NCBI GenBank assembly: GCA_030704615.1
Contig: CM060734.1
Location: 31,992,001 to 32,056,000 of the forward strand
Source: Takakia lepidozioides
Taxonomy: Eukaryota; Plantae; Bryophyta
Direction of reading: 5' to 3'
Length of the DNA stretch: 64,000 nucleotides
This document shows, piece by piece, positions 13,664 through 34,610 of the stretch. The notes under the pieces were generated by a model that searched no databases, had not been told where the DNA came from, and worked only from the letters and a program-made list of their open reading frames with translations. Each line of letters starts with the position of its first letter. Position 1 is the stretch's first letter. Made by a program: the position numbers and the translations under genes.

Positions 13664-13950
13664 TTGCTGTGTTTTCTTTTTTGGCGAAAAATCGCCAAAT
13701 GGCCACCTCAAAACATTAAAATGGAATATTTTGTCATAAATTCCCAATTTTTTCATGGATGAAATCGCCAAACTTCTACAAGGAAAAAAATAAAAATGGA
13801 TGAATTCGTCAAATGTGGATGATATAAATGGATGAAAGTATATTGGAGGTTGATTCTATCCAAATTTTCAATGGATGAACATAATATATAGTTATTTCTT
13901 GTAGCCACTCGTGCTATTTTTCAAATTTAAGAAAAAAATCACTGATCCAT
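13664..13950 (+). repeat. Dispersed AT-rich repeat (MITE-like)
   Basis: Shares aaaatggaatatt.tgtca..ttccc..ttttttcatggatgaaatcgccaaac...gtagccactcgtgcta with 34365-34610. Confidence 0.8.
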
Positions 13951-14215: not shown

Positions 14216-15189
14216 TCGGGAGTGGTATAATCTTCTCCCCCTTCCCTTGGGCTGTGGTCTTTGAGCCTTGTGCTTGGTGCCACCCTCCTGCGAGGTTGCT
14301 ATAAAAGAGGTTATTTTTTCCTCTCCCTATAATTAAGGGGCTTGAACTGTTAGTCGCGAGCGTTTCCCATTGATTTTTTTTTGTCTTTAAGGTGTCATGG
14401 TTTTAGTCATGGTTATCTAGAATTACAAATGAAGTCCCAACACACAAAATATAAATATAAATATCTAAAATGTCCTAGTTAACTAGACGCCAGGTGAGGT
14501 ACCAAGCCTCACTTGGGACATGGGGATAGGTTTTCCCGTTGTGAGGATGGAGGAGGCTCATCTTCTTATAGTGAAAATAGAAAGTGAACATAATGGAATC
14601 CCTCCACTCATGAATCCACTCAATCACATAAACTAAGTCAAGCCAAGGGCACCCTTGCTAAGGGAATCCACCCTACAAAGCCCTCTCTACACTCCTTCTC
14701 AATACCTAGAGCTATGGAGGTGAGAGAGGCTCATGGAGGCTCTTGGCCCTCAAGGACCCCAAATAGTCCTTCAACAAGTCGTCAAAGACTCCTCAAAGCT
14801 CGCCAAATATTGGCAGGCTCTTGGGGCCTTGGTGTACTGTTTGGAGTACCATTGTCCAAGCTTTGGGAGCCTTAGTGAGATTGTTTGAGATCTTGAGGGC
14901 TCTTAGAGAGTTATTTGAGAGATCCTTGAAAGGTCTTGTCTATTGCTTAAGTAAAAGAGTGTGGAGAAAGGGTAGTTTGAGAGCATGTTGTGATAGGAAT
15001 TGCTTTAGTCTCTCTTCCTTGTAGTTTTCCACCCTCTCTGTAGGCCAAAACCTTTCCGTAGGTGGAGGCAAGAGTCAGTCCGGGTTTGGGCTCGGGTGTC
15101 TTGCAGAAGCGACACTGTAGAGTATTTTTGGTGTGGGGGAGTTATTTTTTTGATTTTCTTGTGTTTGGATCCCATCCACACCTGCATGC

Positions 15190-17090
15190 TTGACTGTGCG
15201 CCATGTCAGTTTTGTATGGGCGCTTGTTTCCATAGGAGGTTGGTCCAGATTTGATCACCGGCCAATCCTAGAGCGTAAGGGGTTGTTTCAATACCTTGAG
15301 GGGTCGCCCATGGACGATTACCATGAGTTTAGGCGGGGACATGAGGTGGAGATTGAGGAATGGCAGGAGTATTGGCCACTTGACTATATCTCCATCACTA
15401 GAGGCATAAGAGCAGCGACGACACCAGCAGCTACACCAACATCCCCAACTGCAAGCACTAGTAGTGGGACAAATGGTATAGGAGGTGGGAAATCCACTCA
15501 AGCTCCTGTTGCAGCACCAGCACCCGTGCCTGCCTTTAACATAATTGTGGAATTCTTCGAGGAGTTGAGGAGAACTACCATGGGATAATGACAGAGAAGT
15601 TGCGGAGCTTGCAAGAGTTCCAACGGAGGCCTACTGAGAGTTTGAGGGAGGCTTACACTCGTGTGAGGCGCTTGATAAACGTAACCCAAGGGATTACAGA
15701 AGCTCAGGCAGTCCAATTTTGGTATGGGATATTGGACAAGGAGCTGACGAGAAGGGTACGGGATGCAACTCTCTTACAAGTGGACCAATCCACCTTAGCA
15801 AATGTGTTTTTGCTGGCAGAGCGAATAGAGCTCAATATGGTGGAGGAGCGAGTGGTTATCGTGGGGTTTGGCAACGAGACACAACAAAGTAGGGCTCCTA
15901 GCCAACAACAACCACTACCCCAACGTGTTCAAGGCAACAAAGGGGCTCAGGCGAAGCCTACGGAAGGACAAAGAGGATCTCAGATGTAGAGGTCTCTTCC
16001 TTCATTCTCAGGCCAACAACAATTGGGTGTGAGTTGTTGGGATTATGGAGGACCTCATGTTAAGAAGGATTGCCCGGAGAGAGGCAAAGCGCCAACACAG
16101 GCACAGCCTACACAATTACAGTGTGGGCATTGTGGCAAGTATGGGCATGAGGAGGCCCATTGTTATGACTTGCATCCTGAACTATGGCCAGGCCAATTCC
16201 ATGGGAACAATGGTGGTCGAGGACGAGGCAATGTAGTCTAGAGAGGTAGAGGAGGCAGAGGTCATGGTGGATATCGTAACTAAAACCAATGAGCACAAGG
16301 TCAGGGTCAAGGTCATGACCAAGGCATGGTGGATAGGCTTGCCCAGCTAGAGCAACAGCTTGCTGCCAGACAACTATTCATGTTGCGCCAGCTCCAAGGC
16401 CTGAGATTCAAGCCCCACCTGCACAACCTCTTATGCCTAGGGAAGACCAGATTGGTATGGGCTTCATGTGTGGAGCCGTACTTGTAGGGCCATTGCATGT
16501 ATTGGATTCTGCTGCTACTGTTACTCGAGCAGTAACGCGTGCTCCTGAGCCAAGAGGAGCGGATGTGGATTTTGATCCACAAAGGGGGGAAGCAAGTTGT
16601 CAGACAAGGCTTCGACAGTCCTTTACATTGGCTGAGACAGTATCACCTACGCCATCAATGGCACCCGCTCGCCCAAGTGTGTCAAAGGTAGAGCCAAGAG
16701 TACCATTGGGGAGAGTTGGTGTGACTCGGGAAATGCCAGTGGGTGGTGCTGCAAAGCAAGGTGCAACCAATACATTGTTGGGGGCGGCTACGGCGGTTTA
16801 CCAAGTGTTCTGCAATGACCATTGCAATGCCAGGGATTCGGCCAGTTGTTGTGTTCAGACTAGCAGCTAGACTCTGTGAGAGTGATGATGCATCGGCACT
16901 ATCTGCGGGGATAGCAGATAAGGTGCAGTCTATGGATGCCTTGGATTCAAGGGTGAAGTCAGCCATAGCTGCACCATGGCAAGCGGAAGGTTGCAGGAGT
17001 TGTCAGCTAAGCCAGCCATTGAATGCAGCATGGTGACTCCTGGAGTAGTCCTGGTGGACAATCAGGATGAAGTGTTTCAATTGAGTGGCA
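15190..17090 (+). pseudogene. gag: Element A gag (retrotransposon gag domain + two CCHC zinc knuckles) and linker to protease
   Basis: LQEFQRRPTESLREAYTRVRRL...QFWYGILD; knuckles CWDYGGPHVKKDC and CGHCGKYGHEEAHC; RG-rich tail. Stops and frameshifts present. Confidence 0.85.
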
Positions 17091-18063
17091 TGTCGAACGG
17101 CTTTTACTCACCCATCCCTTCGCTATCCGAGGTGGAAACTCCAAGATAGAAGAGTTGGATATTTCTAAGCACTCAGCCCGTTCAGTACAATCAGTCATGA
17201 CCTACAACTAGTGAATCATGGTTGTGCTTCCCATTTGTATTCCTTCTTGCCTTCATGTTATCAATTCACCTTATCTGATACTGAAGCATCAGATTGCTTC
17301 AGTATCTACTTAATTCCAATTAATCATGCATTCATTTCACAGCTTCACTCATGTCTCTCTACACAGTGTGCTTGTATCGAATAAGTATCAGATTATGATT
17401 TATCAGGTATCAGACCAATGCCATAGTGACACTAATCTGCCCTACAGTTTCTCTACAACTTTGCATGTAACAAGCATCTACTGTTCATCTCTCCTCCTTC
17501 TCCGTGCTCTCCGCCTGATCTCCTCTCATACATGACCAAGAAGCCCTCCCCGTGAAGTGTGTCCCCTCTTTCCGTTGCCGCTCCCCTTATCTGCCCGCAA
17601 GATGTTCTAACCACCTAACTAATTAACCGTCATCCCTGTAGTAACACGTTCCTTTTGCAGATGTTGTTCCCTCACAGTCGTTCCCTGCCAATGATAACTG
17701 TTAACCGTCATCCCTGTAGTAACACGTTCCTTCTGCAGATGTCGTTCCCTCACAGTCATTCCCTGCCAATGATAACTGTTCCCCACGTACTGTGACAGGC
17801 TGTGTCAAGCTGTGTCGAGCTGTGACTGGCTGTGTAAGGCTGTGTCGGCTGTGTCGGGCTGTGTCGGGCTATGTTGGCTGTGACGGGCTGTGTCAGGCTG
17901 TGGCGGGCTGTGACGGGCTGTGTAAAGCTGTGACGGGCTGTGTAACCCCCCTAAAGCCTGCTGCTGCCACCCCTAAGGCTCATGTTGGTCTTAGTCTGTG
18001 CAAAAATTAAGGGTACCCCACAGAACCCGTAAAAGCGTCGAAGTCCCAAGCAGCCCTCTAACA
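17091..18063 (-). repeat. 3' LTR of element B
   Basis: tgtcgaacgg...ctctaaca. Contains a ~78-bp tandem duplication (17623-17780) and a 10-bp-period gctgtg array (17790-17945). Confidence 0.95.
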
Positions 18064-18102
18064 TTTACCCCTCCCTCTCTCAAAAAGCCGTGTCCTCACG
18101 GT

Positions 18103-21100
18103 TTACTGTTTGGGATTAGCAAACCTTTGTGAGCAAGCACCATTCCGACGGTGAGAGTCTCGTGAAAGACTCCGTGTGCGAGCCCGAATCCTGTCACTGG
18201 TTGACGGAGATGATTGAGCACTACTTGGAAATGTCTGACCCTCCTTTGGCTGATAACGAGGTAACCTCTCAGGCATAGGAGATCCCCGTCGTTTCTTCTC
18301 TGCCATCTGAAGTGCATAGTCCTCTGCCATGTCAAAAGAGTCCGCTGAAGAAACAGTAGTATTAGAATCCTCGTTGCCCCCCAGGTGTTTTAACGGCCGA
18401 ACTTTAAGTGGAATCCTGTGTGGCATACAATGTTGTCCAACCATATCTGGAAGTTTAAATTGTACAACTTGTTGTAAGCGCTGGCACGCAAAATTAGTGA
18501 ACGTCCTGAACTCCTTATCTGTATAGGTAAGAGGTGTACTAATGACTTGGGAACAGTGCAAGTATTTCCATGCCTCATGTCCCTTAAAGAAAATATCTTC
18601 AGGGCCGAATTTCTGTGTTGTCAAATTGTTCCAAGCCGAATGAAACCATGAACGAAGTTGGGAATTCTTCTGCATCATAACTTTTGCATCATATAGGTAC
18701 ATATGAGGTGGCACTGAAGGTAAGACCCAATGATCCCCACTGGAATAACTCAGAAATCGCAATTGCATCTTCTGCTGCTCAATGTGATAACGTGCCAGAA
18801 AACAAGCAGCATAGTATTATCCACAGCCCATGACAATACTTGATACCTCCTTGGTTTGGTATAAATGTACCCATGTACAACTTGGAAGGCAATTAATTCC
18901 TTCAACATGGTACCTGCTTCAGACCAGTACCTCGCAAAGTGATGATCCTCAATGGGTCGATTGTTCGGAAGAACCTTAGTCCTAGTCGCCACTGGCAGCC
19001 AAATGCGCATGATCTGGTAGTAATGAGCCAACAAATGTGGCGGACTAAATTCCTTCCAAGCCAAATCCAACACAACGGGAATTTGGTTGAAGGGTATAAT
19101 CATAGCCCGAGTGTACTCTCGTGCAGCAGGAGTCTTAGGTGGGTTAAAAGCAGCATCCCCCCATACCTCAGGCTGTGGTGTGGCTGTAGTAACAACAGGG
19201 TCAGCTACCTGCACAGTCACTTGTTGTGGTATTGGTACCACTAGCCCTTCTACCACTGGCATCTCCTGCACCCCTTGCGAAGAAGACTGAAAAATTAGAG
19301 TTCTGGCTTGTAAATAAGTAGCCATCAGCTGCTCCTCAGGTACAAAGACTCTCTTGTCAATATTTGAACTCAGATCATCCACCTGAGTCTGCAGGCCTTC
19401 TACATCCTCCTATAGCTCCGCTATCCTACTATAGACATTGTCTATAGTAGTTGTGGCAATGTTCTGCACCTGCAGTCTGAGCTCATTCATCTCGCCCTGG
19501 GTGAGCTTCTGTGGTGCTTTGCCTTCCACCGGCCCTTGTGCTAACCAGACCTGCATAAGGTGGTTATCCACCAAGTCGTGTGTGGCACCCCTGAGAGTCT
19601 GCTCCTCGGTGAGCCTGTACACATCTAACTGCTGCTGTAAAGCCTCCATGCGCTTTGCATGAGGTTCAACCAAACTCGCATAGGCAGCAGCCAGATTATT
19701 GGCTTCCTTCCAAGCCTTGTTAGCCACAGAGAGTTCATTTCTATTGACCATGACTGTTTGTTGCAACTCCAGGATGTACCTCTCTTGGTCAGCCTCAACC
19801 TGTCTGTATTGCTTGAAAGTATTCTCATTGCGACAGATTGTATTCTTCATATCAACAATGAGTTTCGCCTGCTCGATTATCTCTGCATCTGCCTTCATAC
19901 ATCTCTCCCCTTGTCTGTTAACTTCTAATGCAGTTTGCTCAAGAGTAGTTGTGAGTGTAGCACATTGTATGGTCATCCTCTCATGTACTACCTGCAACTC
20001 CGTATGTAGTGCATTCACTTCTTGCAACTTGCCCTCATGCTTCACCTGCATTTGGTATAACTGTTGCTTATGTGCTTCATGCAACTGGTCCTGCTCGAGG
20101 TCGGCTTCAATCAGATGTCCCTTGGCCAACTGCAAAGCAGCCTTTGTGTCATCTAACTCTTGCTGTAACTTGAGATTGACCTCCTCATCTACCTTGTTAG
20201 CACACTCAGTGGCAAGTCGAGCCTCAAACTCCTTCCTGAGTTCCTCCCTCAAAGCTGCCAATTGGGTAGATGGAACATGGGATTTCACATAAGTGCCCAA
20301 CAAATTAAATGTTCTGCTTATGGAACTCATAAGCATGGCCTGCTGAGGGTCATCATGGTGAGTTTGCTGCTGTTCTTCCTGATCCTCGACAGTGTGATGC
20401 CTCACCAACCATTCAGGCCATTGCCCCACCAGATTTTCTTCCTGAACCACCTCATCCGCCAGAGGTGCTGCAGTGTCTTGATATTCTATTCCTGGTACCT
20501 CCGTCACAAGTGTGGGTATTACATGCACAGCAGGGTTTTCCCTGGACAACCGCTGCACCTCTGGAATCACTGATTCCCTTACCAAGCCAGAGTTTTCATA
20601 GAGAAGTTCACCCTTCTCAATTTCAGCCACGACCTACTCTTAAGTGGGAATGTTCAACCTTTCTCCTTCCAGAGCAATTGGGGGTGATATCACAGCATGT
20701 ACTAACTGTGGAACCTCTAAAACAATTGAGTCAATTGGTTGTGGTGGCTGTGGTATCGAAGTGACTTCCTCTTCCCTTTCCGAAGGCTGTGCTTCCAATA
20801 ATAACAGCTCTCTGTGCTGTTGTGCCCCATCTTGCACAAGAGCTTGGGAAACATTATCGTGCGATTTCCGTGAAGCCGGTGGATCCACCACTACAGTCAT
20901 ACCCCGCCTCTGTCTCTTAGACTGGTGTTGCCCTGCCAGTCCACCCTCACTGTGTGAAGAGCCCTGCTCTTCAATTGCAGTGGTTTCTGCCTCAAACACT
21001 CTCATCTCCTTATGTTCCCGAGTATCAAGTATGCAAGAATCAAGAATTATTTGGGCAATGACTAGACCAGACACAATGATCGGAGACTTAGCAGCAGTGC

Positions 21101-22328
21101 CCTGTAACCTCTTCATCTCGTCCACCAGTCCGTTGTACATTAACTCCACCCAAGCGACATCCTCTCCCCTCAAAGCTTTCAGGATCTCCTCTGTGAATGA
21201 CCTGCTCAAATATTGTTGGTTCTGTTTCATGGCAAATAGAACGTTCAATATTTGGCCAACTTCCCTAAGCCCTGGGTACTCGGCTTTGGTACAAGCGTCA
21301 CCTTGAGTTTTAAAGAAACTCCCTTCTTGGAACAAATTCCCTATCTGCAATCTTGCCCTGTGCTCATCCACATCCATATGTCCTGATGGCAAATCAAACA
21401 ATTGCTGCAGGTACTGGGGAGTAATTTCTATATCTACTCTAACTCCCGTCCGAGGCTCAAAGTTCTGAAGAAATTGTATCATGAACTGCCGATGATGCAA
21501 GGACCAGTCATTGCGTAGCAGCCCCTCCAATCGCAACTCCCTTAGCAGCTGTACTGCTTGCGGTGCTGCAATTGTTTGCTTCTGCAGTATCGTGGTGCTC
21601 TTCACCCTGATATCCTCCATTCCCCTCACTCTCTTCATTCTAAACAAACAGAAAGGCTTTGTTTGAAACAGCTGAAGGAAAGCTTGCAGGGCACAGAGCA
21701 TGAAGGTATGGTTGGCACATAATGGAACAGGTAAGTGCGTGTATGCCTGTGGGGCTTGCAAGTAACGAGTGAGAGAAAATAAACTCTCAATGCGTCCGTC
21801 CTTGCGCCACTGCGTGAGAAGTAAAGCGAGTGTGTAATCGGTTACATCTGCCATAGCTACCAGGCTAGTGCTTTGATTGCCCATTCCGTCGAGAGCTTGG
21901 CTATTAAGAGCCACTCCGACTCTTCCGCTCATAACACTTCCTATTTCTTGTTCTTGTTTCTTGAAGGGAACCACCTGCATGTAATTCTCACTCCTGATTG
22001 GCTGTGGACTGCTTAGATAATTCCTTATTTCCACCCCCCTCCATGGACATTTCCACCTGGAATGTCCAGTAGGACAGCACATGTGGCATAGGTTTCCCTT
22101 TTCTGAACTCGAAAAGGGTTCCGTTACCCTGGCACTGAATGCATTAATGGGCCCACAATTAGTATTAGTTGTTGTACCGGGTTGGTACTGTGACGGCCCG
22201 ATTTGTCCTCTTGCATGATGAAACTCACTTTTGCAATCGATGCAGCGCGGTGTGCTTCGCCTTCGCCGCCATGTGTCCGTTTCTAAACATGCCCCCGTCT
22301 TCCCCTCTCCGCGTGGCACATTCTCCAA
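18103..22328 (-). pseudogene. Element B extra ORF downstream of integrase (CCHC-like motif, env-like/plant-mobile-domain-like region, long coiled coil)
   Basis: ORFs 20640-22328, 19410-20630 and 18750-19382 share one frame, separated only by point stops (TAA-GAG-TAG; TAG). 18103-18768 follows after a frameshift. Confidence 0.7.
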
Positions 22329-22420
22329 GTTTGACTTCCAAACTTTTTCTTCACTTCATGGCCACTTTTCTAACGTTAGTTCGCGTCCACCTGTCACTGA
22401 CCCTATGGACTGTGTAATCT

Positions 22421-22520
22421 GTATGGGCTGTGTTGGGCTGTGATAGGCTGTGTGGCACTGTGATGGGCTGTGATAGGCTGTGTGACGCTGTGATGGGCTG
22501 TGATAGGCTGTGTCACACTG
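22421..22520. repeat. Internal 10-bp tandem array (30-bp higher-order unit) related to the LTR array
   Basis: tgatgggctg/tgataggctg/tgtg.c.ctg repeated. Confidence 0.9.
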
Positions 22521-22687
22521 TGATGGGCTGTAATAGGTATGCAAACACCTGTAGTTCCCGCCCTGGTCTATATGCTCGGCTTAGCGACAAGTGCTCCATA
22601 CTCCGTTGGTATCACTGGCGCAGCCCGTGACTGCTTTTGCGTTTCAACATGCAAATCGTGCTGCAATGGTTTGTCATGGATACCACT

Positions 22688-24626: not shown

Positions 24627-25620
24627 GCCTCTGTCTGAACTCTCCGTTGGCTCTGCCACATCCTCTCCTCCTTCTTCATCTTCCGTTTCAGAAACTGGAG
24701 TTCCTGCTTTTGGTGTTCCATGCCAACTCTTATCAAAGATTTCTGTCAAATCTTTTATCCAGGGATGTACCTCAGATCTTTCACCTCGTGGTTGATCTTC
24801 TTCCCGTACCAATTCCCTTAATCTTTCTTGCAAAGAAAAAGAAGGAGTGGCATCCAACTCTAGTTCTTCCGGTATGGGTGATGTACTCTCTGATCTTAAT
24901 GGTGTGAGAGGTCCAGATGATTCCCCTATGTCTATTCCTCTCTCCCAAAGATATGGATAATTAGCTTTCAGATAGCTTTCTCTTTTTGCTGAATATCTCT
25001 GGAGTCTAGCTTCTCTTTCATCACTCATGTCCCATGTCTTTTATTTCTTTAATGTGGCAATAACCAAAACTCTCTTCTGTAGTATCTCTCGTATATACCT
25101 GGGTTTCTTTCAAGCTTCAATGCACCCTTGGCTATACTAGAAGTCTCCGTTACCATATAACCATATGGCAAACAAGTCTGGAAAGTTGTTCTTGGTGTGA
25201 GTTTGATCCACAGAATATCCTTTGGAATCCAATTCTTTACCATTACAAGCTCTTCATGCATATGAGTATAAACATTCACCTTCCTTTCCTCCCAGCCTTC
25301 AAACTCCACTCACTTAATGGATGGCAACGCTATCACATAAACCAGTGTTGGTAACCAACGTGCTCTTCCTCTACAGGCCATCTGATAAATCTTTATCACC
25401 CCTTTCTCCAGACCCCACTCAGGGTCGGCATCATGCACTCTCTTAAGAATGTTTTCTTTACAACCGTCTGGCAATTCCAAGAACCTTTGAAAGAATTGTT
25501 TGGACAATCTTTCCTTCTCAGTTTCACAGGGAATTTGATTAACATCAAATTCTTTAATTCTCCATCCACCATGATCCCACCAGATGCCTGTCACATCCGG
25601 TTGTTCATGACCCAGTTCCC
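24621..25620 (-). pseudogene. Element B 5' ORF fragments (putative gag N-terminus)
   Basis: Open frames between the primer-binding site and the pol remnant. No diagnostic motif recognised. Confidence 0.4.
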
Positions 25621-25636
25621 CAGTATGGTCGCCAAA

Positions 25637-26596
25637 TGTCGAACGGCTTCCTTCGCTATCCGAGGTGGAAACTCCAAGATAGAAGAGTTGGATATTTCTA
25701 AGCACTCAGCCCGCTCAGTACAATCAGTCATGATCTACAACTAGTGAATCATGGTTGTGCTTCCCATTTGTATTCCTTCTTGCCTTCATGTTATCAATTC
25801 ACCTTATCTGATACTGAAGCATCAAATTGCTTCAGTATCTACTTAATTCCAATTAATCATGCATTCATTTCACAGCTTCACTCATGTCTCTCTACACAGT
25901 GTGCTTGTATCGAATAAGTATCAGATTATGATTTATCAGGTATCAGACCAATGCCATAGTGACACTAATCTGCCCTACAGTTTCTCTACAACTTTGCATG
26001 TAACAAGCATCTACTGTTCATCTCTCCTCCTTCTCCGTGCTCTCCGCCTGATCTCCTCTCATACATGACCAAGAAGCCCTCCCCGTGAAGTGTGTCCCCT
26101 CTTTCCGTTGCCGCTCCCCTTATCTGCCCGCAAGCTGTTCTAACCACCTAACTAATTAACCGTCATCCCTGTAGTAACACGTTCCTTTTGCAGATGTTGT
26201 TCCCTCATAGTCGTTCCCTGCCAATGATAACTGTTAACCGTCATCCCTGTAGTAACACGTTCCTTCTGCAGATGTCGTTCCCTCACAGTCATTCCCTGCC
26301 AATGATAATTGTTCCCCACGTACTGTGACAAGCTGTGTCGAGCTGTGTCGAGCTGTGACTGGCTGTGACTGGCTGTGTCGGCTGTGTCGGGCTGTGGTGG
26401 GCTGTGACTGGCTGTGTCGGGCTTTGTCGGGCTGTGACGGGCTGTGTCGGGCTGTGGCGGCTGTGACGGGCTGTGTAACCCCCCTAAAGCCTGCTGCTGC
26501 CACCCCTAAGGCTCCTGTTGGTCTCAGTCTGCGCAAAAATTAAGGGTACCCCACAAAACCCGTAAAAGCGTCTAAGTCCCAAGCAACCCTCTAACA
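25637..26596 (-). repeat. 5' LTR of element B
   Basis: Direct repeat of 17091-18063 with scattered substitutions, a 13-bp indel near 17104 and array length variation. Confidence 0.95.
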
Positions 26597-27000
26597 TGGC
26601 CCAGCCGAGAGGAGGTATAGGCCACTACGAGTCTTGTTGGATTCGGGAGCACAGCCATTGATGTTGGGGAGAGCAGCAGTTGCAAGCTTGGGCCTTACAG
26701 AGGCGGATTTGGAGCCTTGCCTTTTCTAGATTCAGACATCTTTAGGTGGTTCAGAGAAGACACAAGGGATCACACGCCATGAGCTCTTCATTCGACTACA
26801 ACCAGATCATCTTATGGATGGCTCAGTCATGAGAGCCAAAACCATTGTTTACGAACGCGATGTCCTATGATGTGCTTGTTGGTGGGGTTATGTTATACCC
26901 AATGGAATTTACTCTGGACTTTTGGGAGGAAACGACGTCCTATAGGCCGGAGTGGCAGTCAGGGGATAGCCGACGTGCACTGCTCCTAGTGCGGTTTATT
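26597..27000 (+). pseudogene. Element A aspartic protease
   Basis: RVLLDSGAQPLMLG (DSG active site, about 26640) and YDVLVGG (ILG-type motif). Confidence 0.8.
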
Positions 27001-27354
27001 GGGAATGTAGCGGTGAATCACAGGAACATGATGCCAACATTGGCTGCATTTTCAGGTGTGGTGGCTTGGGGTGGTGAGCTCTTGAAGGGCAATAGCCATG
27101 CAGATGATAGGCCACCACCTGATGAGGACAAGCAATTGGCATACAAGGCTGAGTTGTTTCCTCGTGTTCCTGTGCATAGCTCACTATGGGGTACAGTTGG
27201 GAATTTGCAGCAAGTGGCCAGCCAGTGTTTGCAGCAAACATGACAGGAGGCCTTTCCATCGGTAGGTGAGGGGAGTTCAGTGACATCACCTGGACCTCCT
27301 CAGTTAGCTCCATTGGACACAATGCCTACTATCTGGCAGAAACTTGACTCAGAC

Positions 27355-28336
27355 ATTTGTTTGCTAGACCTGTTTAGAGCATGAGCATTGGGTTTGCAGG
27401 AGTGTTGCAACCAAGAATCAAAGTACGCAAGTACTTATAAGTGGAGAAGGATGAGATTGCTCGCCGTGTTTCCATGCACCATGTTGTCTTACTCACATAT
27501 CAGTATCATGAGTTGTTGCCTCTCTCAACAATTCAAGGGTACCAAAAGGCCTTGCCAGCAGACATTATCATGCTGGGGGCGGAGGATTTGGATCGACATG
27601 GTCCCATTGACTTGGTGATAGCAGGGTGGCCTTGCCAAGGACATTCTCCCGCAGGTCATGGTAATGGTTTGCATGATGCACGATCGTATCTGTTTTGGGA
27701 GATGTTGCGAGTGTTGCGTGACTTGCAGGTGAGGCAAGTGCAACCTCTAGTTTACATCCTGGAGAATGTTCCTCTCATGGGGTCTATCGGGCCAGGGTTA
27801 TGGTCAATGTGCATCAGATCCGGTCATGGATTGGACCAGCTGTATTGTTAGATGCAGCTGTAGTGGGTTCACGGACACATAGGCCTAGGTTGTGGTGGAC
27901 CAATCTTGCACCACCGGAGTTGCTCAAGAGAGCCTATTATTCCATTCAACGGCCACCCAACCTCACGGTTGAGGGAATTTTGGACCAAGGGAGGCAACCA
28001 CAGAGAGTGCAACATGATGATCGTCTACCTTTGGCGGTGGTCAATCGAGTGAGGCAACCACGTGCGGCCTTGCCTACACTCATGAGTTTTCCCTCGTCTC
28101 ATGCTTTTCGAGACAATGGTCCAGGGTTGATTTGGGACAATGCGCTATAACAATTGGTGGAGCCTAGTGCGGATGAGCGAGAACGGGCAATGGGGTTTGC
28201 CACGGGCAGTACAGCTATGTCAGCTCTGTCAGAGGCATCACGACGCCAGATGTTGGATCAAACAATGGATCTCAATTGTCTGACATGGGATATTGGCTTA
28301 TGCATGGTTGAACAACGGAGATTGCAAGCAGAGTAA
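27355..28336 (+). pseudogene. C5-cytosine DNA methyltransferase domain, DNMT3-like, inside the element A polyprotein
   Basis: Motif I ICLLDLF(R)/GMSIG, II YL*VEKD, IV GPIDLVIAGWPCQGHS, VI YILENV, VIII LLDAAVVGSRTHRPRLWWTNL, IX ERERAMGF, X RRQMLDQTMD. Linear I-X order. Two frameshifts and two stops. Confidence 0.93.
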
Positions 28337-28346
28337 GTGCAAACTA

Positions 28347-29082
28347 CACTGGCTCAAAAGCGGCAGATGTGCCCTCCACTAAAAATCCATAAGAAAAAAT
28401 TAATTAAATTTATATTTAAGGATATTTGTTCAAATATATTTTTATCTTCATAGGTAATGGTATACTAATCATATTTAGTAAATGGTCTCATCCCAAATAT
28501 TTGAGATATTTTTTATTGTAATTATTTTCTAACATTTTTTCCTTACTTAGAAATAATAGCTATTTACTATTATCTTGTAGTTTATGAAATTTGTCCATAT
28601 AACAATAAGCTCCTAGAGACAATAACAATATATATATTCCTAGCAAAGATCTCCACCCAAATATGAGTTTTTCAAAATGTTAGGACAAATCGTCATTTTG
28701 GGGATTTTTTTGGTACAAAAAAGTCCATAGAGTCTTGATGGATGGATGGAATTGTTCACAAATTTATGTTTGTGTCTATTTAAACATTGTGTATCCAGTA
28801 GTAAAGTCCATATATGAATTGGTTTTGCACAAATAAGTTATTCAAATGGCATTTGGGACATTAGATGGACTGTGACATTCCATTGGAATTCCCTACAAAA
28901 GTCCATAGCTTCATGAGATTTCATCCAAATTCCAAAATAATTGTACCCACATGTACATATGGTAGATGGCTAACCTATTTTAAGTCCATTTGCTATGAAT
29001 GTATACTTATGTGTATAGGATGCAGAATAATATGACAAGCAGTCAGTCGAAAACTACAAATTGAGTCCAAACTAAGCCAGTG
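28347..29082. mobile_element. AT-rich non-autonomous DNA element (MITE) with short TIRs and TA duplication
   Basis: ta|cactggct...agccagtg|ta. Sharp AT-rich island between the DNMT and RT regions. Tc1/mariner-like or CACTG-type. Confidence 0.8.
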
Positions 29083-29499
29083 TAGTCTACATCTACCCAG
29101 CATTGGTGACTACTTGTGCACTTCCATTGGATATTGCACCCTCTTTGCCAACCGGGACGGTGGAGGCAGTGAGTGGGGGCGAGCACAAGATCATGGGGTG
29201 CAAACACCCACGGCAGATGTGGGATGAGATGCGGAAAGAGAGAGTCATTGGATCTCTCAAACAACAATATGAGGAGTGGGGAGAGCCATACACTAAGGAT
29301 CAGTTGGAGGCCAATGTGGCCAATGTTTTTGAAGAGGTTGAGAATGTTTCTTCACTAGAAGATGTTCTCAAGGTGGCTATGGCGGAGCAAGTGGAGGCTA
29401 CGCCACAGTCAGGGTGGGCGGACAAGGCCCAAGAGGTTGCTATCTAGCAACCAAAGGTTGCGTCTCCTACCTCCAAGCCTGGTGTATCCAAGGTTGTAG

Positions 29500-31545
29500 T
29501 CACTGAGGACAATTGGGAACCAGATGTTAGACCTACAGTCACCAGAGGAGAGAGACGGAGGATCCAGCGATTTCTAAGGGCTTATAGAAATTGCTTTGCC
29601 TTCGGTTTGAAGGATTTGGGGTGTTTGAAGGGCCAGGAGATTCGTATTGATTTTGCAAGTGATACGCCAATTTTTCGAAGGCCCTATAGGTATAGTGACA
29701 TGGAGAGATATTTGATCCAGTCACGGACTATGGAGTTGTTCGAAGCTGGATTGGTAGAGTTGTCAGGCGGGGAGTATGCCTCAACAACGGTGATGTCAGC
29801 TAAGAATGATATCTATGGCAATTGGACAGAAAGAGGATGTGTGGGGACTATCGTCTTGTAAACCGTCAGACTAAGTCCAATAGATATGCCATGCCAACTC
29901 CAGAGGAAATCTTTGATGCCATTGGGCATGCGAAGATGTTTAGCACATTGGACTTACGATCGGGTTATCACCAGTTACCAATCAAAGAGGTTGACAAGCA
30001 AAAGACGACATTCTGGGGGATTGACCAGCATGGGAAGGATTGTTGTACCAATGGCGCTTCCTACCATTTGGGTATCAGAGGTTCATGGATATGATTCTTG
30101 CAGGGCTAGACTTCGCTTGGTGCTACATTGATGATACCATCATCTTTAGTGCCACGGTTGAGGAGCATGAGAGACACCTTCATGTGGTGCTTGAGTGCTT
30201 GATGGCGCATGGATTGAAACTGCACCCTGGCAAGTGCAAGTTCTTCCACGATCAGATTGAGTATCTGGGCCACATGATATATCCTGGAGGATTGGGTGTT
30301 CAACAGACAAAGGTGGAGGCCATTGCACGCATTCTACGCCCCATAGATGTAGCAAACTACTATTGTCGGTTTGTCAAGGGATTTAGCAGCATTGCGAAGG
30401 CTCTTACCAAATTGACCAAGGTGGGTCAGGAGTGGCAGTGGGAGAAGGAGCAAGAGGAAGCCTTTGAGAAACTCAAGGCTCGATTGATTTCTGCGCCTAT
30501 TCTGAGGCGGCCTATTTGGGGGCGGCCTTTCCAGCTACACACGGATTGGAGTATGATGGGGATTGGAGCAGTGCTCACACAGATGGATGATAAGGGAAGA
30601 GAGTTCGTAGTGGCATATGCTAGCCGCTCGAACAATGATGCTGAGACGAAGTATAAGCTCATATGAAGGAGAGTGTCTAGCTGTAGTATGGGCAGTGACA
30701 CATTTCTATCTCTATGGCAATCTCTTTACCTGTCACGGACATAGCCCAGAGGAACTTACCAGGAGTAAATACCAGAAGTTACAAAATTACCATGTTACCG
30801 GAAGTTACCATGACTTACCGTGATTTATCATGATCTACCATGATTTATCATTACTTACCAAGTTACCGGGAGTTTACCAAATTACTAAGAGTAACTTGGG
30901 AAACTACTCAGAAAGCTTCCTTTTGAGGAAACTTCTCCATCAAGATACCTCCTTTGTTTAAGGAAGCTTCTCCATCAAGAAACCTTTGGTTAATCTTGGA
31001 AACTTCTCCAGCAAGAAACCTCCATAGGGGAAGTTTCTTGGGGAAGTTTCTTAGTAGCCAGTATATATAGGAGGCGAGACTAGACACTCTTCAGTCTCGC
31101 CAACACAAGTTCAAGCTACTCTTGTTCCAAGTCCAGTACTCCAGTCCAGCTTCCAATATCCAGTCCAGTTTCCAGCATTCCAGTATCCGAGTCGAGTTCC
31201 AGTATTTTGTACTCTTGTCCATTGTTATAAAGATCATCTTGATTCATGTTCACCTACCATGCATTCGGCCACGCCGACCTTGACTTCTTATCTAGTCTTG
31301 TACCTCTACTCTGATACCTTGTTTGTGTTCTGTCATGTTCTCGTCCTTGACATTACCCTTGTCATGGATCATCAACCATTGAAGTGGTTGATGGAGTCAG
31401 ACAAGCTTATAGGGAAGCTTGCACGGTGGGCACTTATGCTTCAAGAGTACGACTTCGAGGTGGTACATCGAGCCGGAATAGTCAACCGGGATGCGGATGG
31501 ATTGAGTCGCAATCCATGTACAAGTGAGCTTGATGATACATGACA
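29500..31545 (+). pseudogene. pol: Element A reverse transcriptase and RNase H (interrupted by solo LTR)
   Basis: PIFRRPYR, RMCGDYR, FSTLDLRSGYHQL, LPFG, YIDD (30124), LKLHPGKC, YLGH, LHTDWS, AYASR, DHQPLKWL, DADGLSR. Confidence 0.95.
30731..31352 (+). mobile_element. Solo LTR (622 bp)
   Basis: tgtcacggac...gtccttgaca inverted ends, perfect 5-bp TSD TTACC (30726-30730 and 31353-31357), TATA near 31062. Removal restores RNase H YGNLFT/LVMDHQP. Confidence 0.93.
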
Positions 31546-31859
31546 TTGGCATGGTGAGACGGACGAGGAGATGGTGCCAGGATGACACGCATCTGCCTTT
31601 TTGTGTATTCTAGCGATGAGAGCTCAAGCTGGTCCATCCCATGTGATTGGTCATATAGTGTGCATGATGATCTAGAGATCAGTGAGAAGCTTGGTGGTGT
31701 TAAGAATGTGCATGAAGATGCAACAGTGTTGGCCTACCTTCGTACTGGAGAAGGAGAAAGATCAGATCCTACAACGAGCCAAGAGATTCAAGTGGGAGGG
31801 GACTCACCTACTCCGAGTATGGAAGGATGGACGAGTGAGGATTGTTCTTCATCCAACAC

Positions 31860-32930
31860 AACGAGCGCGATTGGTACGCCATGCCCATGAGGAGTTGAGA
31901 CATTTTGGGGTGCGGCGTACTCATAGTTTGCTGTAAGGACAATATTGGTGGCGGGGCATGCACACGGATGTGCAACAGTTGGTGGCAAGGTGTATGGTGT
32001 GTGAAAGAGTGCGGGCTTCTGTCAATGCACCTACTCCACAATTGCATTATTTACCCATTATGGGTTTGGGCTATCATTGGAGTCTTGACTTCGCAGGCCC
32101 ATTGCCACTAACAATTCGCCATAACAAGTATGTGCTGGTGATGGTGGAACATTTCTCCAAGTGGATTGAACTGGCAGCATTGCCTGACAAGGCAAGTGAG
32201 GGGGCTGCGTATGGATTATTAGATCGAGTGTTTAGCCAATTTGGTGCTCCAGCCGAGGTACTCACAGACCAAGGGAGAGAATTTTTGGGGGAGTTTCAGG
32301 CTTTGTGTGAGCAAGCCTTGATAGATCACCACACTACTTCTCGGGATCATCCCGAGGCTGATGGCTTGGTAGAGAGGGTTGTGCAAACAGTCAAGCGAGG
32401 CTTGTGCAAGTATGACTTGCAGAAGAGACACTTGGGAGATTGGGACCTTCAGCTACCTTGGTTGGCCATGGGCTACAGGTTTAACAAGCAAGCATCACTT
32501 GCCTCGTTCTCGTCTTATTTCCTTCTCTTTGGCCGAGAGCCAGATTTGTTTGCATCTATTCGCAGGGAGACTGCAGTAGTCCTCAAGCTTGATGATCCGG
32601 ATGTGTGGACACAAGGATGTGCCCAGTCGGCAGAATTGTTCAAGAGAGTCATGCCTATGGCTTTTGAGAACATTTCTATTGCCCAACATCGAGATACATT
32701 GAGGTACGTCATTATACGTGGATGGGGATATTGACCAAGTGTTTGGCGTTTCCATCCTGGGGACTATGTGTATCAGCAGCAGACAACGCCCACGACCTTG
32801 GATGTCACAGCAGGTCATGTGATTCTAAGGGTCCGGGAGGTGTTGCTTCAGGAGTGTTGATTCTGGAGGGTCGAGATGGCATGGTATGGAAAAGACCATG
32901 TGCGCAATTATGCGTCATGTCACCTTCCAC
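31860..32930 (+). pseudogene. Element A integrase
   Basis: HAHEELRHFG...CMVCER zinc finger; WSLDFAGP, LTDQGREF, HPEADGLVERVV (DDE); RFHPGDYVY C-terminal domain. Confidence 0.95.
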
Positions 32931-32983
32931 ATATGGATGGGAGAATAAATCCCAACCTTGCACTGGTACCTGCAAGGTTGCGT

Positions 32984-33133
32984 TGCATGCTATGTGGGCA
33001 TGCTGGTGGTGCCACGACCATGTTGGTGTGTGACAAATGCTCAAGGGGGTGACACATGGGATGCTTGATACCACCACTTCAGGAGGTTCTTAGTGGAGAA
33101 TGGTTGTGTCCACGATGCCTTGGACAGATGTAG
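32984..33133 (+). pseudogene. PHD finger (C4HC3) at the C-terminus of element A integrase
   Basis: Manual translation CMLCGHAGGATTMLVCDKCSRG*HMGCLIPPLQEVLSGEWLCPRC. One TGA at 33050 (likely from TGG). Confidence 0.92.
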
Positions 33134-33389
33134 TGGGGCATGATAGTGGTGAGGTTGACAAGTGATTCAAGGTATAGCTACCGGGAGTTCAATGCCATGG
33201 ACACCCAATTGAGGCCATGGATTGCAGGAAGGCGAGTAACGAGGGGCTATTTTTGCACCCGGCCTCTTGATTTATTGACTTCAGATACTGGGACTTGGGC
33301 GATTGATGACTAAGCGATGATCTTATTGGGATGGATACTTGCCAGCTATCCGGTGTTAGAGGGATCTAATCACCAGCTAGGGGGGCGAT

Positions 33390-33585
33390 TGTGGTATAGC
33401 TTTTTAGGATTGTGTGCTTAGATTATGTGGTGGACAGCGATGTATGTTATGGCACGATGCTTAGGTGCACGATAACTGTCATGGTTTTAGTCATGGTTAT
33501 CTAGAATTACCTACTTCTAGTTAACTAGGATATTTTAGATATTTATATCTATATTTTGTGTGTTGGGACTTCATTTGGTCTCACA
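33390..33585 (+). repeat. Candidate 3' LTR of element A
   Basis: Begins tgtg just after the polypurine tract and ends caca. The last ~100 bp are related to 14393-14487. Confidence 0.6.
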
Positions 33586-34244: not shown

Positions 34245-34610
34245 AATTACCGGCGAAAAATCTCTAGACTTCAACCTGGAAAATGGGTCAGCTACGTGTA
34301 CCAAGGAATCATGGGGAAAGACACTAAGGTAGTGGTATCTAAAAGTGTGCATTTAAGCCATCGTTTTTTGTATTGGTGAATTTTTGCCAGATTTCGACCT
34401 CAAAAATAAAATGGAATATTCTGTCAAAATTCCCTATTTTTTCATGGATGAAATCGCCAAACATCTCCAAATAAAAGATAAATTATGGATGAATTAGCCA
34501 AATATGGATGATATAAATGGATTACAGTAGAGAGCTGGATTTAGTGGATGAACATAATGTACGGCTATTTTTTTGGTAGCCACTCGTGCTAAATTTCTCA
34601 AAACAATGCT
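34245..34610 (+). repeat. Dispersed AT-rich repeat family members
   Basis: Matches 11540-11655 (inverted) and 13664-13950 (direct). Confidence 0.75.

What the first reader, a model, noticed from the sequence alone, without database searches (positions are those of the whole stretch)
14393..33585. Gypsy retrotransposon encoding both a DNA-methylation writer and a histone reader
Seen: after removing three nested insertions the polyprotein reads gag-CCHC-PR-DNMT3-RT-RH-INT-PHD. Established: animal DNMT3 is steered by a PHD-like ADD domain that reads unmethylated H3K4, and chromoviral integrases use a C-terminal reader for targeting. Inference: a self-contained epigenetic module that could methylate its own cDNA or insertion site (camouflage, self-silencing or heterochromatin seeding) and choose chromatin by histone state. 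From memory, retrotransposon-borne DNMTs were reported in Symbiodinium and the charophyte Klebsormidium (de Mendoza et al. 2018); I do not know of this architecture being characterised in land plants.
Basis: partly seen in the sequence, partly recalled or inferred. Interest (0 to 1): 0.95.

Follow-up and report, generated by a model that had tools for sequence, protein, structure and literature searches.

The report
Decayed DNMT3-PHD gypsy retrotransposon in liverwort
This is a long-dead copy of a jumping gene that carries its own DNA-methylating enzyme and a histone-reading finger, in what looks like a liverwort genome. The same family turns out to be spread through liverworts, peat mosses and green algae, although in the papers I could search it has been described only in one alga.

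Summary
Window 14393-33585 (+) is one Ty3/gypsy element reading gag-CCHC-PR-DNMT-RT-RH-INT-PHD. It is interrupted by a full LTR retrotransposon (17091-26597), an AT-rich 0.8-kb insert (28328-29101) and a solo LTR (30731-31352).

The copy is dead. It has at least 6 frame changes, about 18 in-frame stops, a destroyed DNMT motif I and only about 100 bp of recognisable LTR.

The DNMT is DNMT3-like by profile against PDB (E 2e-23; DRM2 5e-13) and by fold (TM 0.84 to DNMT3A). The PHD is a canonical C4HC3 finger on the integrase tail, not an ADD. It is closest to PHD fingers that I recall as readers of unmethylated H3K4.

This is not a one-off capture. Collinear copies occur in Calypogeia fissa and Sphagnum troendelagicum, a truncated copy in Marchantia polymorpha, and a protein hit in Riccia sorocarpa. 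Intact polyproteins of about 2,350 aa occur in metagenomes, and algae (Closterium, Mesostigma, Scenedesmus) carry related polyproteins.

DNMT, RT and INT trees agree, and DNMT dN/dS between lineages is about 0.12-0.22. This extends the known Gypsy-DNMT3 kind (Klebsormidium, 2018) to land plants. I found no paper reporting that. What the DNMT and PHD do is inferred, not shown.

The parts
14393..14487 (+). Recognisable remnant of the 5' LTR. It starts TGTCATGG. The first 34 bp are identical to the 3' copy. The next 62 bp are 96.8% identical but inverted.
15154..16238 (+). gag region. An intact CX2CX4HX4C zinc knuckle lies at 16122-16163, with a decayed first knuckle upstream. There is an in-frame stop at 15987.
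   Evidence: (64-67% aa identity to the Calypogeia and Sphagnum gag)
16700..17090 (+). Stretch between gag and the protease, cut by the nested element. No domain hit of its own.
17091..26597 (-). Nested insertion 1: a full-length, unrelated gypsy LTR retrotransposon. LTRs are 17091-18064 and 25637-26597 (96.7% identical). TSD is TGGCA/TGGCC.
26603..27240 (+). Aspartic protease, with active site LLDSGA at 26634-26651.
   Evidence: Relatives have Pfam Asp_protease_2 at the aligned place.
27322..28333 (+). DNMT3-like C5 cytosine methyltransferase domain. The motif I remnant (27361-27381) has lost its glycines and is followed by a stop. Motif IV GWPCQ is at 27624-27638, VI ILENVP at 27756-27773, VIII at 27878-27904 and X at 28175-28198. 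The domain has 2 frame changes and about 4 stops.
28328..29101 (.). Nested insertion 2: an AT-rich (31% GC) element with imperfect 27-nt terminal inverted repeats, unclassified. It sits in the DNMT-RT linker.
29504..30730 (+). Reverse transcriptase (YIDD at 30124-30135) and the first part of RNase H, with 3 frame changes.
30731..31352 (.). Nested insertion 3: a 622-bp solo LTR (TG...CA) with 5-bp TSD TTACC, inside RNase H.
31353..31540 (+). Rest of RNase H.
31676..32731 (+). Integrase, with the H2C2 zinc finger (31880-32011) and the DDE core (about 32072-32353). It is 79% aa identical to the Calypogeia copy.
32984..33118 (+). C4HC3 PHD finger at the integrase C-terminus. An in-frame TGA at 33050 lies where relatives have Trp or Tyr.
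33477..33585 (+). Start of the 3' LTR. It probably runs further downstream, but the end was not found.

Best explanation
What it is (shown). The region is a relic of a Ty3/gypsy LTR retrotransposon. It belongs to an old green-lineage clade whose pol polyprotein carries a DNMT3-type cytosine-5 methyltransferase between protease and reverse transcriptase, and a PHD finger at the C-terminus of the integrase. The host looks like a liverwort. This copy is dead. Three later transposon insertions, at least 6 frameshifts, about 18 stops, a ruined SAM-binding motif I and mostly lost LTRs rule out any activity here.

What the family is (shown). Both extra domains are conserved parts of the element. They co-diverge with RT and INT and have been under purifying selection.

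How the family probably works (inferred, about 0.45 overall). The polyprotein is cut by its protease. The DNMT travels in the particle or pre-integration complex with RT and methylates the newly made cDNA, or the DNA around the new insertion. The copy would then enter the genome already marked. That could keep its own dosage low, or make it look like resident methylated DNA. The PHD stays on the integrase and tethers it to histone H3 tails, as the chromodomain does in chromoviruses. From its nearest solved relatives, the likeliest target is unmodified H3K4, so insertions would go into silent, methylated, gene-poor chromatin.

They would not form one ADD-DNMT3-like unit.
For: Architecture and decay of the window copy:

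- The copy is collinear with an intact 2,358-aa polyprotein (P0241) from PR to PHD at 38-46% identity.

Family trait, not a one-off:

- Full gag-CCHC-PR-DNMT-RT-RH-INT-PHD copies occur in Calypogeia fissa (L043, 60-79% aa identity, LTRs 98%) and Sphagnum troendelagicum (L045). A truncated copy occurs in Marchantia polymorpha (L044).
- A metagenome scan returned 35 loci. About 30 of them (L008-L038) are collinear with the intact polyprotein P0241, and the L008-L036 copies tested lie dS 0.05-0.28 from the Sphagnum copy.
- L017 is nearly intact, with 2 stops in 6.5 kb.
- Named protein hits come from Calypogeia, Sphagnum, Marchantia and Riccia.
- Algal relatives occur in Closterium, Mesostigma, Scenedesmus and Monoraphidium.

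DNMT3 type:

- The family profile hits DNMT3A/B/C at E 2e-23, DRM2 at 5e-13, M.HhaI at 2e-11 and DNMT1 at 0.38.
- Motifs run in linear order I, IV, VI, VIII, X.
- An AlphaFold model of an intact family member (pLDDT 84, pTM 0.81) has DNMT3A/B/C as all 50 listed top PDB matches, with E 7e-19 and TM 0.84.

Selection and co-divergence:

- Between bryophyte lineages DNMT omega is 0.12-0.22, RT 0.15 and INT 0.11. Window against the others gives pN 0.22-0.26 with saturated pS.
- The bryophyte clade and the PR-DNMT-RT ('type A') clade are monophyletic in the DNMT, RT-RH and INT trees, with support 0.97-1.0.

PHD:

- The C4HC3 pattern is present in about 60 polyproteins of the clade.
- The PHD profile's best PDB matches are CHD4, KMT2C/D, KDM5 PHD1, WSTF, ATXR5, BAZ2A/B, PHF21A/BHC80, KAT6A, DPF3, AIRE and UHRF1. 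No ING, BPTF or TAF3 appears in the top 60.

Literature:

- Some retrotransposon DNMT3 domains methylate CG de novo in yeast (PMC5890265).
Against: - No activity data exist for this family. The related Klebsormidium Gypsy-DNMT3 domain gave no methylation in yeast, although the authors call that inconclusive.
- The substrate (cDNA, flanking DNA or RNA) is unknown.
- PHD specificity is inferred only from sequence neighbours, and the H3K4me0 preference of those neighbours is from my own knowledge, not a tool result. The family keeps a Met and a Trp at places that in ING-type fingers contribute to a methyl-lysine cage, so H3K4me3 reading is not excluded.
- Protease cleavage sites are not mapped, so whether the DNMT ends up free or fused to PR or RT is unknown.
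- Among closely related, mostly dead Sphagnum copies, DNMT omega (0.4-1.0) is higher than RT omega (0.3-0.6). This could mean recent relaxation.
- CpG depletion of the window copy (o/e 0.44) is the same as that of the unrelated nested element (0.43). There is no sign of special methylation history.
Confidence: 0.85

Rival explanations
1. One-off chimera. A host DNMT3 gene, or a fragment of one, and a host PHD exon merely lie among transposon debris, or were captured once at this locus.
For: The region is a pile of nested transposons. The DNMT is flanked on both sides by inserted elements.
Against: The same order, PR-DNMT-RT-RH-INT-PHD, occurs in single uninterrupted ORFs (P0241 at 2,358 aa, P0238, P0129) and in independent bryophyte genomes. 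The DNMT, RT and INT trees are congruent.
Confidence: 0.02
2. The DNMT is a passenger. It was acquired once, is carried along, has no role in the element's life cycle and is decaying neutrally.
For: Within Sphagnum-like copies DNMT omega is 0.4-1.0 and exceeds RT omega. The Klebsormidium enzyme showed no activity in yeast.
Against: Between lineages omega is 0.12-0.22, close to RT and INT. All catalytic motifs are invariant across 13-26 divergent members. The domain is retained from chlorophytes to bryophytes in two different positions in pol. High omega among near-identical copies is what post-insertion decay of dead copies gives for any domain.
Confidence: 0.07
3. The DNMT is functional but does something other than marking its own cDNA. 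It might methylate RNA, act as a DNA-binding or oligomerising module without catalysis, or methylate host DNA in trans and so shape the host methylome.
For: Catalytic motifs are conserved, but the substrate is unknown. de Mendoza et al. discuss RNA methylation and host-level effects as options. DNMT3-type domains form oligomers in the solved structures that the model matches.
Against: The fold and the motif IV/VI/VIII residues are those of DNA-acting DNMT3s rather than DNMT2 (E 2e-23 against 4e-9). Its position next to RT fits action on cDNA. Neither point is decisive.
Confidence: 0.25
4. The PHD finger reads an active mark (H3K4me3) or something other than histone H3. It would then steer integration toward promoters, or serve protein-protein contacts, rather than targeting silent chromatin.
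For: The family consensus keeps M (in MLLCD) and W (in GWH), which in ING-type fingers take part in the methyl-lysine cage (own knowledge; alignment).
Against: The top 60 PDB neighbours contain none of the classical H3K4me3 readers and are dominated by fingers I know as H3K4me0 or free-H3-tail readers. The conserved acidic residues before MLLCD and the CLxPPLxxVPxGxWxC tail are typical of that class (own knowledge).
Confidence: 0.25

Closest known systems
KnitGypsy-Dnmt3 of the charophyte Klebsormidium nitens (de Mendoza et al. 2018, PMC5890265)
   Same: It is a Ty3/gypsy-type element with a non-rearranged DNMT3-like domain inside the pol ORF. It is intronless, its DNMT is under purifying selection, and its host is a streptophyte.
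   Different: The host here is a land plant. Relatives with clear ends have ordinary direct LTRs, whereas the paper says KnitGypsy-Dnmt3 has a DIRS-like repeat layout. A PHD finger is not mentioned in the paper's main text or in the three supplement files held as text. Direct homology could not be tested because no K. nitens sequence turned up among the named hits.
Chromoviruses (Ty3/gypsy elements with a chromodomain on the integrase C-terminus; Gao et al. 2008, as cited in PMC6673714)
   Same: A histone-reader domain is fused to the C-terminus of the integrase, and its presumed role is tethering integration to a chromatin state.
   Different: No chromodomain hit was found. Chromoviruses carry no DNMT.
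PHD-bearing retrotransposons (Kapitonov and Jurka 2003 CR1-like LINEs; Perez-Alegre et al. 2005 in Chlamydomonas; both as cited in PMC6673714)
   Same: A PHD finger is encoded within the retrotransposon protein. The green-algal precedent is an LTR element, according to my recollection of the 2005 paper.
   Different: No DNMT was reported in those elements. Homology to them was not tested here.
SymbioDIRS-Dnmt3 of Symbiodinium (PMC5890265)
   Same: A DNMT3-type domain sits inside a retrotransposon pol. For this one, de novo CG methylation was shown in yeast.
   Different: It is a DIRS element with a tyrosine recombinase, in a dinoflagellate host, and represents an independent acquisition.
EpiLTRs (bioRxiv 10.64898/2026.05.21.726589)
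   Same: LTR retrotransposons that combine a DNA methyltransferase with a chromatin-reader domain.
   Different: They carry an adenine methyltransferase plus a DNMT that is sister to the DNMT4 clade plus a chromodomain. They occur in Cymbomonas and Euglena. The authors explicitly call this acquisition distinct from the streptophyte Gypsy-DNMT3.

Membership tests
Ty3/gypsy LTR retrotransposon | pol order PR - RT - RNase H - INT, with a DDE integrase | tested here: met
   Pfam hits in order. Collinear with intact polyproteins. The DNMT is an insertion between PR and RT.
Ty3/gypsy LTR retrotransposon | gag with a CCHC zinc knuckle | tested here: met
   CX2CX4HX4C at 16122-16163. zf-CCHC hits in relatives.
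Ty3/gypsy LTR retrotransposon | Direct LTRs (TG...CA) flanked by a target-site duplication | tested here: inconclusive
   In the window only about 100 bp of LTR similarity remains, part of it inverted, and no TSD was found. Relatives do have LTR pairs: Calypogeia 98%, Sphagnum 73%, L007 91%.
Gypsy-DNMT3 retrotransposons (type: KnitGypsy-Dnmt3) | DNMT domain in frame inside the pol polyprotein of a gypsy element | tested here: met
   Single ORFs of 2,188-2,374 aa contain PR, DNMT, RT, RH and INT. The window copy is collinear with them.
Gypsy-DNMT3 retrotransposons (type: KnitGypsy-Dnmt3) | The DNMT is of DNMT3 type with non-rearranged motifs | tested here: met
Gypsy-DNMT3 retrotransposons (type: KnitGypsy-Dnmt3) | Purifying selection on the DNMT across copies | tested here: met
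   Omega is 0.12-0.22 between bryophyte lineages. It is near 1 only among near-identical dead copies.
Gypsy-DNMT3 retrotransposons (type: KnitGypsy-Dnmt3) | Sequence homology and shared ancestry with the K. nitens elements themselves | not testable with these tools
   No K. nitens protein appeared among named hits, and no eukaryotic genome collection was available to scan.
Gypsy-DNMT3 retrotransposons (type: KnitGypsy-Dnmt3) | DIRS-like arrangement of terminal repeats (as stated for KnitGypsy-Dnmt3) | tested here: inconclusive
   Ordinary direct LTRs occur in L043, L045 and L007. However, an inverted LTR segment occurs in the window and in L007.
DNMT3 de novo cytosine methyltransferases | Catalytic domain closest to DNMT3 in sequence and fold, with motifs I-X in linear order | tested here: met
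   Profile E 2e-23 to DNMT3A/B/C against 5e-13 for DRM2 and 0.38 for DNMT1. All 50 listed Foldseek matches are DNMT3A/B/C, TM 0.84. Alignment.
DNMT3 de novo cytosine methyltransferases | Placement inside the DNMT3 clade in a tree with reference DNMT families | not tested
   No reference set of DNMT1, DNMT3, DNMT4, DNMT5, DNMT6, CMT and DRM sequences could be drawn from the tools. Only PDB ranking was done.
DNMT3 de novo cytosine methyltransferases | N-terminal PWWP and/or ADD reader modules (animal-type architecture) | tested here: not met
   No PWWP or ADD hit in the window pieces or in intact relatives. The protease lies upstream.
DNMT3 de novo cytosine methyltransferases | Catalytically competent sequence in this copy | tested here: not met
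   The motif I glycines are lost and followed by a stop. The domain has 2 frame changes and about 4 stops.
PHD finger (C4HC3) | Cys4-His-Cys3 ligand pattern with canonical spacing | tested here: met
   32984-33118 reads C-x2-C-x11-C-x2-C-x4-H-x2-C-x14-C-x2-C, with one in-frame stop. Pfam PF00628 scores only 13 bits in the window because it is cut at the stop, but 42.7 bits in P0241 and 35.8 bits in P0119.
PHD finger (C4HC3) | Binding to a defined histone H3 state | not testable with these tools
   Only sequence neighbours among solved fingers are available.
Chromovirus | Chromodomain at the integrase C-terminus | tested here: not met
   No chromodomain hit. A PHD occupies that place.
DIRS retrotransposons | Tyrosine recombinase instead of a DDE integrase | tested here: not met
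   An rve DDE integrase with an H2C2 finger is present.

The most novel reading that the evidence does not exclude
A single, very old clade of green-lineage Ty3/gypsy elements has carried a DNA-methylation writer (DNMT3) together with a histone reader (PHD on the integrase) from chlorophyte and streptophyte algae into bryophytes. It may still be mobile in some liverworts or peat mosses: one copy is nearly intact and one LTR pair is 98% identical. If so, land plants harbour transposon-encoded de novo methyltransferases that could mark new insertions or leak onto the host genome. Some bryophyte gene models called 'DNA methyltransferase' or 'PHD protein' would then be relics or domestications of them.
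Probability: 0.3. Interest if true: 0.8.

Novelty: new member of a known kind. Interest (0 to 1): 0.55.

Why it matters
Retrotransposons that encode the enzyme normally used to silence them are a puzzle. In the papers I could search they are documented for gypsy elements only in one charophyte alga, where the activity test was inconclusive.

The kind also exists, in many copies and with a conserved integrase-borne PHD finger, in liverworts and peat mosses. That includes Marchantia, which I know as a genetically tractable model, although the one locus I fetched there is truncated. This makes the question testable in land plants with good methylomes, histone maps and transformation.

It also warns annotators. 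Several bryophyte proteins named or typed as DNA methyltransferases or PHD proteins are hits of this transposon family.

The window copy itself has no functional importance. It is a fossil.

Tried and rejected
- DIRS-like ends. The inverted 62-bp repeat at the two ends, together with the paper's remark on DIRS-like repeats, suggested a non-LTR layout. Relatives have plain direct LTRs, and the window's two 'TGTCA' starts align with the Calypogeia LTR start. I now read it as a small inversion in a degraded 5' LTR. This is not fully explained.
- The 255-bp direct repeat 13671-13925 / 34363-34602 as the element's LTRs. Rejected, because it lies outside both LTR starts in mirrored order.
- Search for the 3' end and TSD (TAAGG). 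Several chance-level candidates, none convincing. Local alignment of the two LTR regions beyond 100 bp scores no better than shuffles.
- Whether the two TAG stops that bracket the DNMT in L017 are shared by other copies. The linkers do not align, so there is no answer.
- Looking for Klebsormidium sequences among hits. None were named.
- Rfam scan of the window. Nothing found.
- CpG depletion as a sign of self-methylation. The window copy does not differ from the unrelated nested element.
- Other copies in the window. None.

Broken frames were read only piece by piece, or with X or gaps at breaks inside scripts. No contig looked human.

Full report
**What is in the window**

The + strand between 14393 and 33585 carries the parts of one Ty3/gypsy element.
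- Stop-free pieces give Pfam hits in the expected order: a weak gag hit; C-5 cytosine DNA methylase (PF00145, E 2.3e-12, 47 bits against a cut-off of 22); RVT_1; RT_RNaseH_2 (E 1e-21); integrase H2C2; and rve (E 1.4e-14).
- By direct reading there is an intact CX2CX4HX4C knuckle at 16122-16163 and the protease active site LLDSGA at 26634-26651.
- DNMT motif IV (GWPCQ) is at 27624-27638, VI (ILENVP) at 27756-27773, VIII at 27878-27904 and X at 28175-28198. RT YIDD is at 30124-30135.
- A complete C4HC3 PHD finger lies at 32984-33118.
- Pfam scores the window's PHD below threshold only because an in-frame TGA at 33050 cuts it. Relatives have Trp or Tyr at that place.

**The three nested insertions are real**
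- The first is a full, unrelated gypsy element on the minus strand, 17091-26597. Its LTRs are 17091-18064 and 25637-26597 (96.7% identical) and its TSD is TGGCA/TGGCC. It sits about 30 bp upstream of the protease active site.
- The second is an AT-rich (31% GC) 0.8-kb element, 28328-29101, with imperfect 27-nt inverted ends, in the DNMT-RT linker.
- The third is a 622-bp solo LTR, 30731-31352, with TSD TTACC, inside RNase H.
- An uninterrupted relative (L002) aligns across both of the latter sites. It leaves about 910 and about 614 extra bases in the window.

**The copy is dead**

An intact 2,358-aa relative (P0241) aligns collinearly from PR to PHD at 38-46% identity.
- Inside the uninterrupted blocks the window changes frame at least six times.
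- It carries about 18 in-frame stops, 7 of them in the otherwise single-frame stretch 31352-33118.
- DNMT motif I has lost its glycines and runs into a stop.
- Of the LTRs only about 100 bp still match. The first 34 bp are identical. The next 62 bp are 96.8% identical but inverted in the 5' copy. Nothing is alignable beyond that.
- The LTR start (TGTCA...) matches that of the Calypogeia copy. This places the 5' LTR start at 14393 and the 3' LTR start at 33477.
- The true 3' end and the TSD were not found.

**Host**

An intronless Tic22-like ORF (44163-45950) has its best named relatives in Marchantia paleacea (55%), Riccia fluitans, Calypogeia fissa and M. polymorpha (50-53%). The next named hits, in flowering plants, are about 36% identical. 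A neighbouring ORF hits DUF688 and DUF1645, which I know as plant-specific families. The window is therefore most likely from a liverwort that is not among the named proteins. The claim that this is a land plant stands.

**The DNMT is DNMT3-like**
- A profile of 13 family DNMT domains has the motifs in linear order.
- It hits DNMT3A/3B/3C catalytic domains in the PDB at E about 2e-23. DRM2 follows at 5e-13, M.HhaI at 2e-11, DNMT2 at 4e-9 and DNMT1 at 0.38.
- An AlphaFold model of an intact family member (L017 ORF, pLDDT 84, pTM 0.81) has DNMT3A/B/C as all 50 listed top Foldseek matches, with E 7e-19 and target-normalised TM 0.84.
- No PWWP or ADD domain is present.

**The PHD**

The C4HC3 finger follows the integrase in about 60 polyproteins of the clade, with consensus CxxC...MLLCDxCxxGWHxxCLxPPLxxVPxGxWxCPxC.
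- The profile's best PDB matches are CHD4, KMT2C/D, KDM5 PHD1, WSTF, PHF12, ATXR5, BAZ2A/B, KAT6A, PHF21A, DPF3, AIRE and UHRF1.
- From my own knowledge these mostly bind the unmodified H3 tail (H3K4me0). The classical H3K4me3 readers are absent from the top 60.
- This is a lead on specificity, not a test.

**It is a family, and it is widespread**

A full HMMER search with the window's DNMT piece found 2,054 proteins at E of 0.001 or better, many of them gypsy polyproteins. Two architectures share a homologous DNMT.
- Type A is PR-DNMT-RT-RH-INT(-PHD). It includes the window, Closterium, Mesostigma and many metagenome ORFs of 2,188-2,374 aa.
- Type B is RT-RH-DNMT-INT-PHD. It includes the Scenedesmus 'pol' proteins of 3,225-4,177 aa and many metagenome ORFs.
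- A word-indexed search with a type A polyprotein listed 81 long polyproteins. Most carry PF00628 (PHD) together with RT and INT domains.

In land plants the evidence is as follows.
- A search with an intact DNMT ORF gave named hits in Calypogeia fissa, Sphagnum troendelagicum, S. tenellum, Marchantia polymorpha and Riccia sorocarpa.
- The fetched loci show full gag-CCHC-PR-DNMT-RT-RH-INT-PHD elements in Calypogeia (L043: all in one frame, about 12 stops, LTR pair 98%, 60-79% aa identity to the window) and in Sphagnum (L045: LTR pair 73%).
- Marchantia has a truncated copy, L044.
- A scan of JGI metagenomes returned 35 loci. About 30 of them (L008-L038) are collinear with P0241, and the L008-L036 copies tested lie only dS 0.05-0.28 from the Sphagnum copy, so they are Sphagnum-like DNA.
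- One of them, L017, has just two stops in 6.5 kb.

**Selection and co-divergence**
- Nei-Gojobori estimates were made on codons anchored to the window pieces, with stops and breaks skipped. For the window against every other copy, synonymous sites are saturated (pS 0.73-0.80). pN is 0.22-0.26 for the DNMT, 0.18-0.21 for RT-RH and 0.12-0.21 for INT.
- Where dS can be estimated between bryophyte lineages, omega is 0.12-0.22 for the DNMT, 0.15 for RT and 0.11 for INT.
- Among near-identical, mostly dead Sphagnum-like copies omega rises to 0.4-1.0, as expected for decay after insertion.
- FastTree trees of DNMT, RT-RH and INT each recover the bryophyte copies as one clade (support 0.99, 1.0, 1.0). 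That clade is nested in a monophyletic type A clade (0.97-0.99).
Family members do not lack the DNMT or PHD, and the DNMT is not evolving neutrally.

**How it most likely works**

Shown: the element's anatomy, the DNMT3-like fold with conserved catalytic motifs, the PHD on the integrase tail, and long-term constraint on both.

Inferred: after protease processing the DNMT acts near RT on new cDNA or at the insertion site. The integrase-borne PHD tethers integration to H3 tails, by analogy with chromodomains in chromoviruses, and probably to unmethylated H3K4. The two modules would act on different proteins at different steps.

Published tests showed de novo CG methylation for the dinoflagellate DIRS-borne DNMT3 domains. 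The result for the Klebsormidium gypsy-borne one was inconclusive (PMC5890265).

**What is known**
- de Mendoza et al. 2018 described Gypsy-DNMT3 in Klebsormidium nitens. Their survey included Physcomitrella and Selaginella; Marchantia and Sphagnum do not occur in the supplement files held as text. PHD is not mentioned in their main text or in those files.
- Later papers (Mol Biol Evol 2025, PMC12344493; a 2026 preprint) still cite only that report for streptophytes.
- PHD fingers in retrotransposons, and chromodomain targeting, are established.
- I found no paper reporting DNMT-bearing retrotransposons in land plants. The searchable library is incomplete, so this is absence of evidence only.

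**Verdict**

It is a new member of a known kind, Gypsy-DNMT3. The useful additions are these:
- the kind extends into bryophytes;
- it consistently pairs the DNMT with an integrase PHD finger;
- it exists in two domain orders across green algae;
- near-intact copies may exist in peat mosses.

**Method notes**

No contig looked human. Broken frames were searched piece by piece, or read with X or gaps at breaks inside scripts.

Noticed in passing
window 17091-26597 (- strand): The nested gypsy element carries about 4 kb of long ORFs 3' of its integrase (20640-22328, 562 aa; 19410-20630, 406 aa; 18103-19382). The two longest gave no Pfam hit; the third was not scanned.
   Followed up: partly
L017 3192 and 4509 (JGI contig Ga0209208_10023449): This near-intact Sphagnum-like copy has only two stops in 6.5 kb. 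Both are TAG, and they exactly bracket the DNMT domain. This could be chance, or a read-through arrangement that doses the DNMT. The linkers do not align to other copies, so it could not be checked.
   Followed up: partly
L006 1-18357 (ENA ERZ25067493 ctg159469_5x_c): An 8,262-bp unit with an intact 2,358-aa PR-DNMT-RT-RH-INT-PHD polyprotein is repeated head-to-tail 2.2 times at 99.8% identity. It could be a tandem array or an assembled circle.
   Followed up: no
window 13671-13925 and 34363-34602: A 255-bp direct repeat (76% identical) flanks the whole element, lying outside both LTR starts in mirrored order. It may be the LTRs of an older small element into which the DNMT-gypsy inserted.
   Followed up: partly
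window 14426-14487 vs 33516-33577; L007 17622-18007 vs 18798-19184: A segment of the LTR is present in inverted orientation, both in the window's 5' LTR and downstream of the 3' LTR in an unrelated family member. de Mendoza et al. describe DIRS-like repeats for the Klebsormidium element. This may be a recurrent feature of the clade.
   Followed up: partly
proteins P0411 (Mp_7g09570), P0393 (AXG93_3217s1680) and P0384 of Marchantia polymorpha: These are hits of this transposon's DNMT ORF. One source name begins 'PHD-type domain', one begins 'DNA (cytos...' (cut off in the output), and one begins 'CCHC-type d...' (also cut off). Only the P0384 locus was inspected; it is a truncated gag-CCHC-DNMT copy. 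The other two may be relics or domestications.
   Followed up: no
L017, L043 and the window element: CpG observed/expected differs widely between copies: 0.28 in the near-intact L017, 0.44 in the window copy and 0.74 in the Calypogeia copy.
   Followed up: no
window 40399-41511 and 44163-45950: Two apparent host genes lie downstream: a DUF688/DUF1645 ORF and an intronless 595-aa Tic22-like ORF. The second was used to place the host among liverworts.
   Followed up: partly
window 58575-62666: LINE-like ORFs are present: an endonuclease (58575-60305) and an RT (61488-62666). A 141-bp repeat in three tandem copies lies at 58661-59083, inside the first ORF.
   Followed up: no
window 30731-31352: The solo LTR inside RNase H begins TGTCACGG, much like the DNMT-gypsy LTR start TGTCATGG. 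It could belong to a related family.
   Followed up: no
Sphagnum-like loci L008-L036: At dS below 0.25 the DNMT omega (0.4-1.0) is consistently higher than the RT omega (0.3-0.6) in the same pairs. This could be recent relaxation on the DNMT or noise from dead copies.
   Followed up: no
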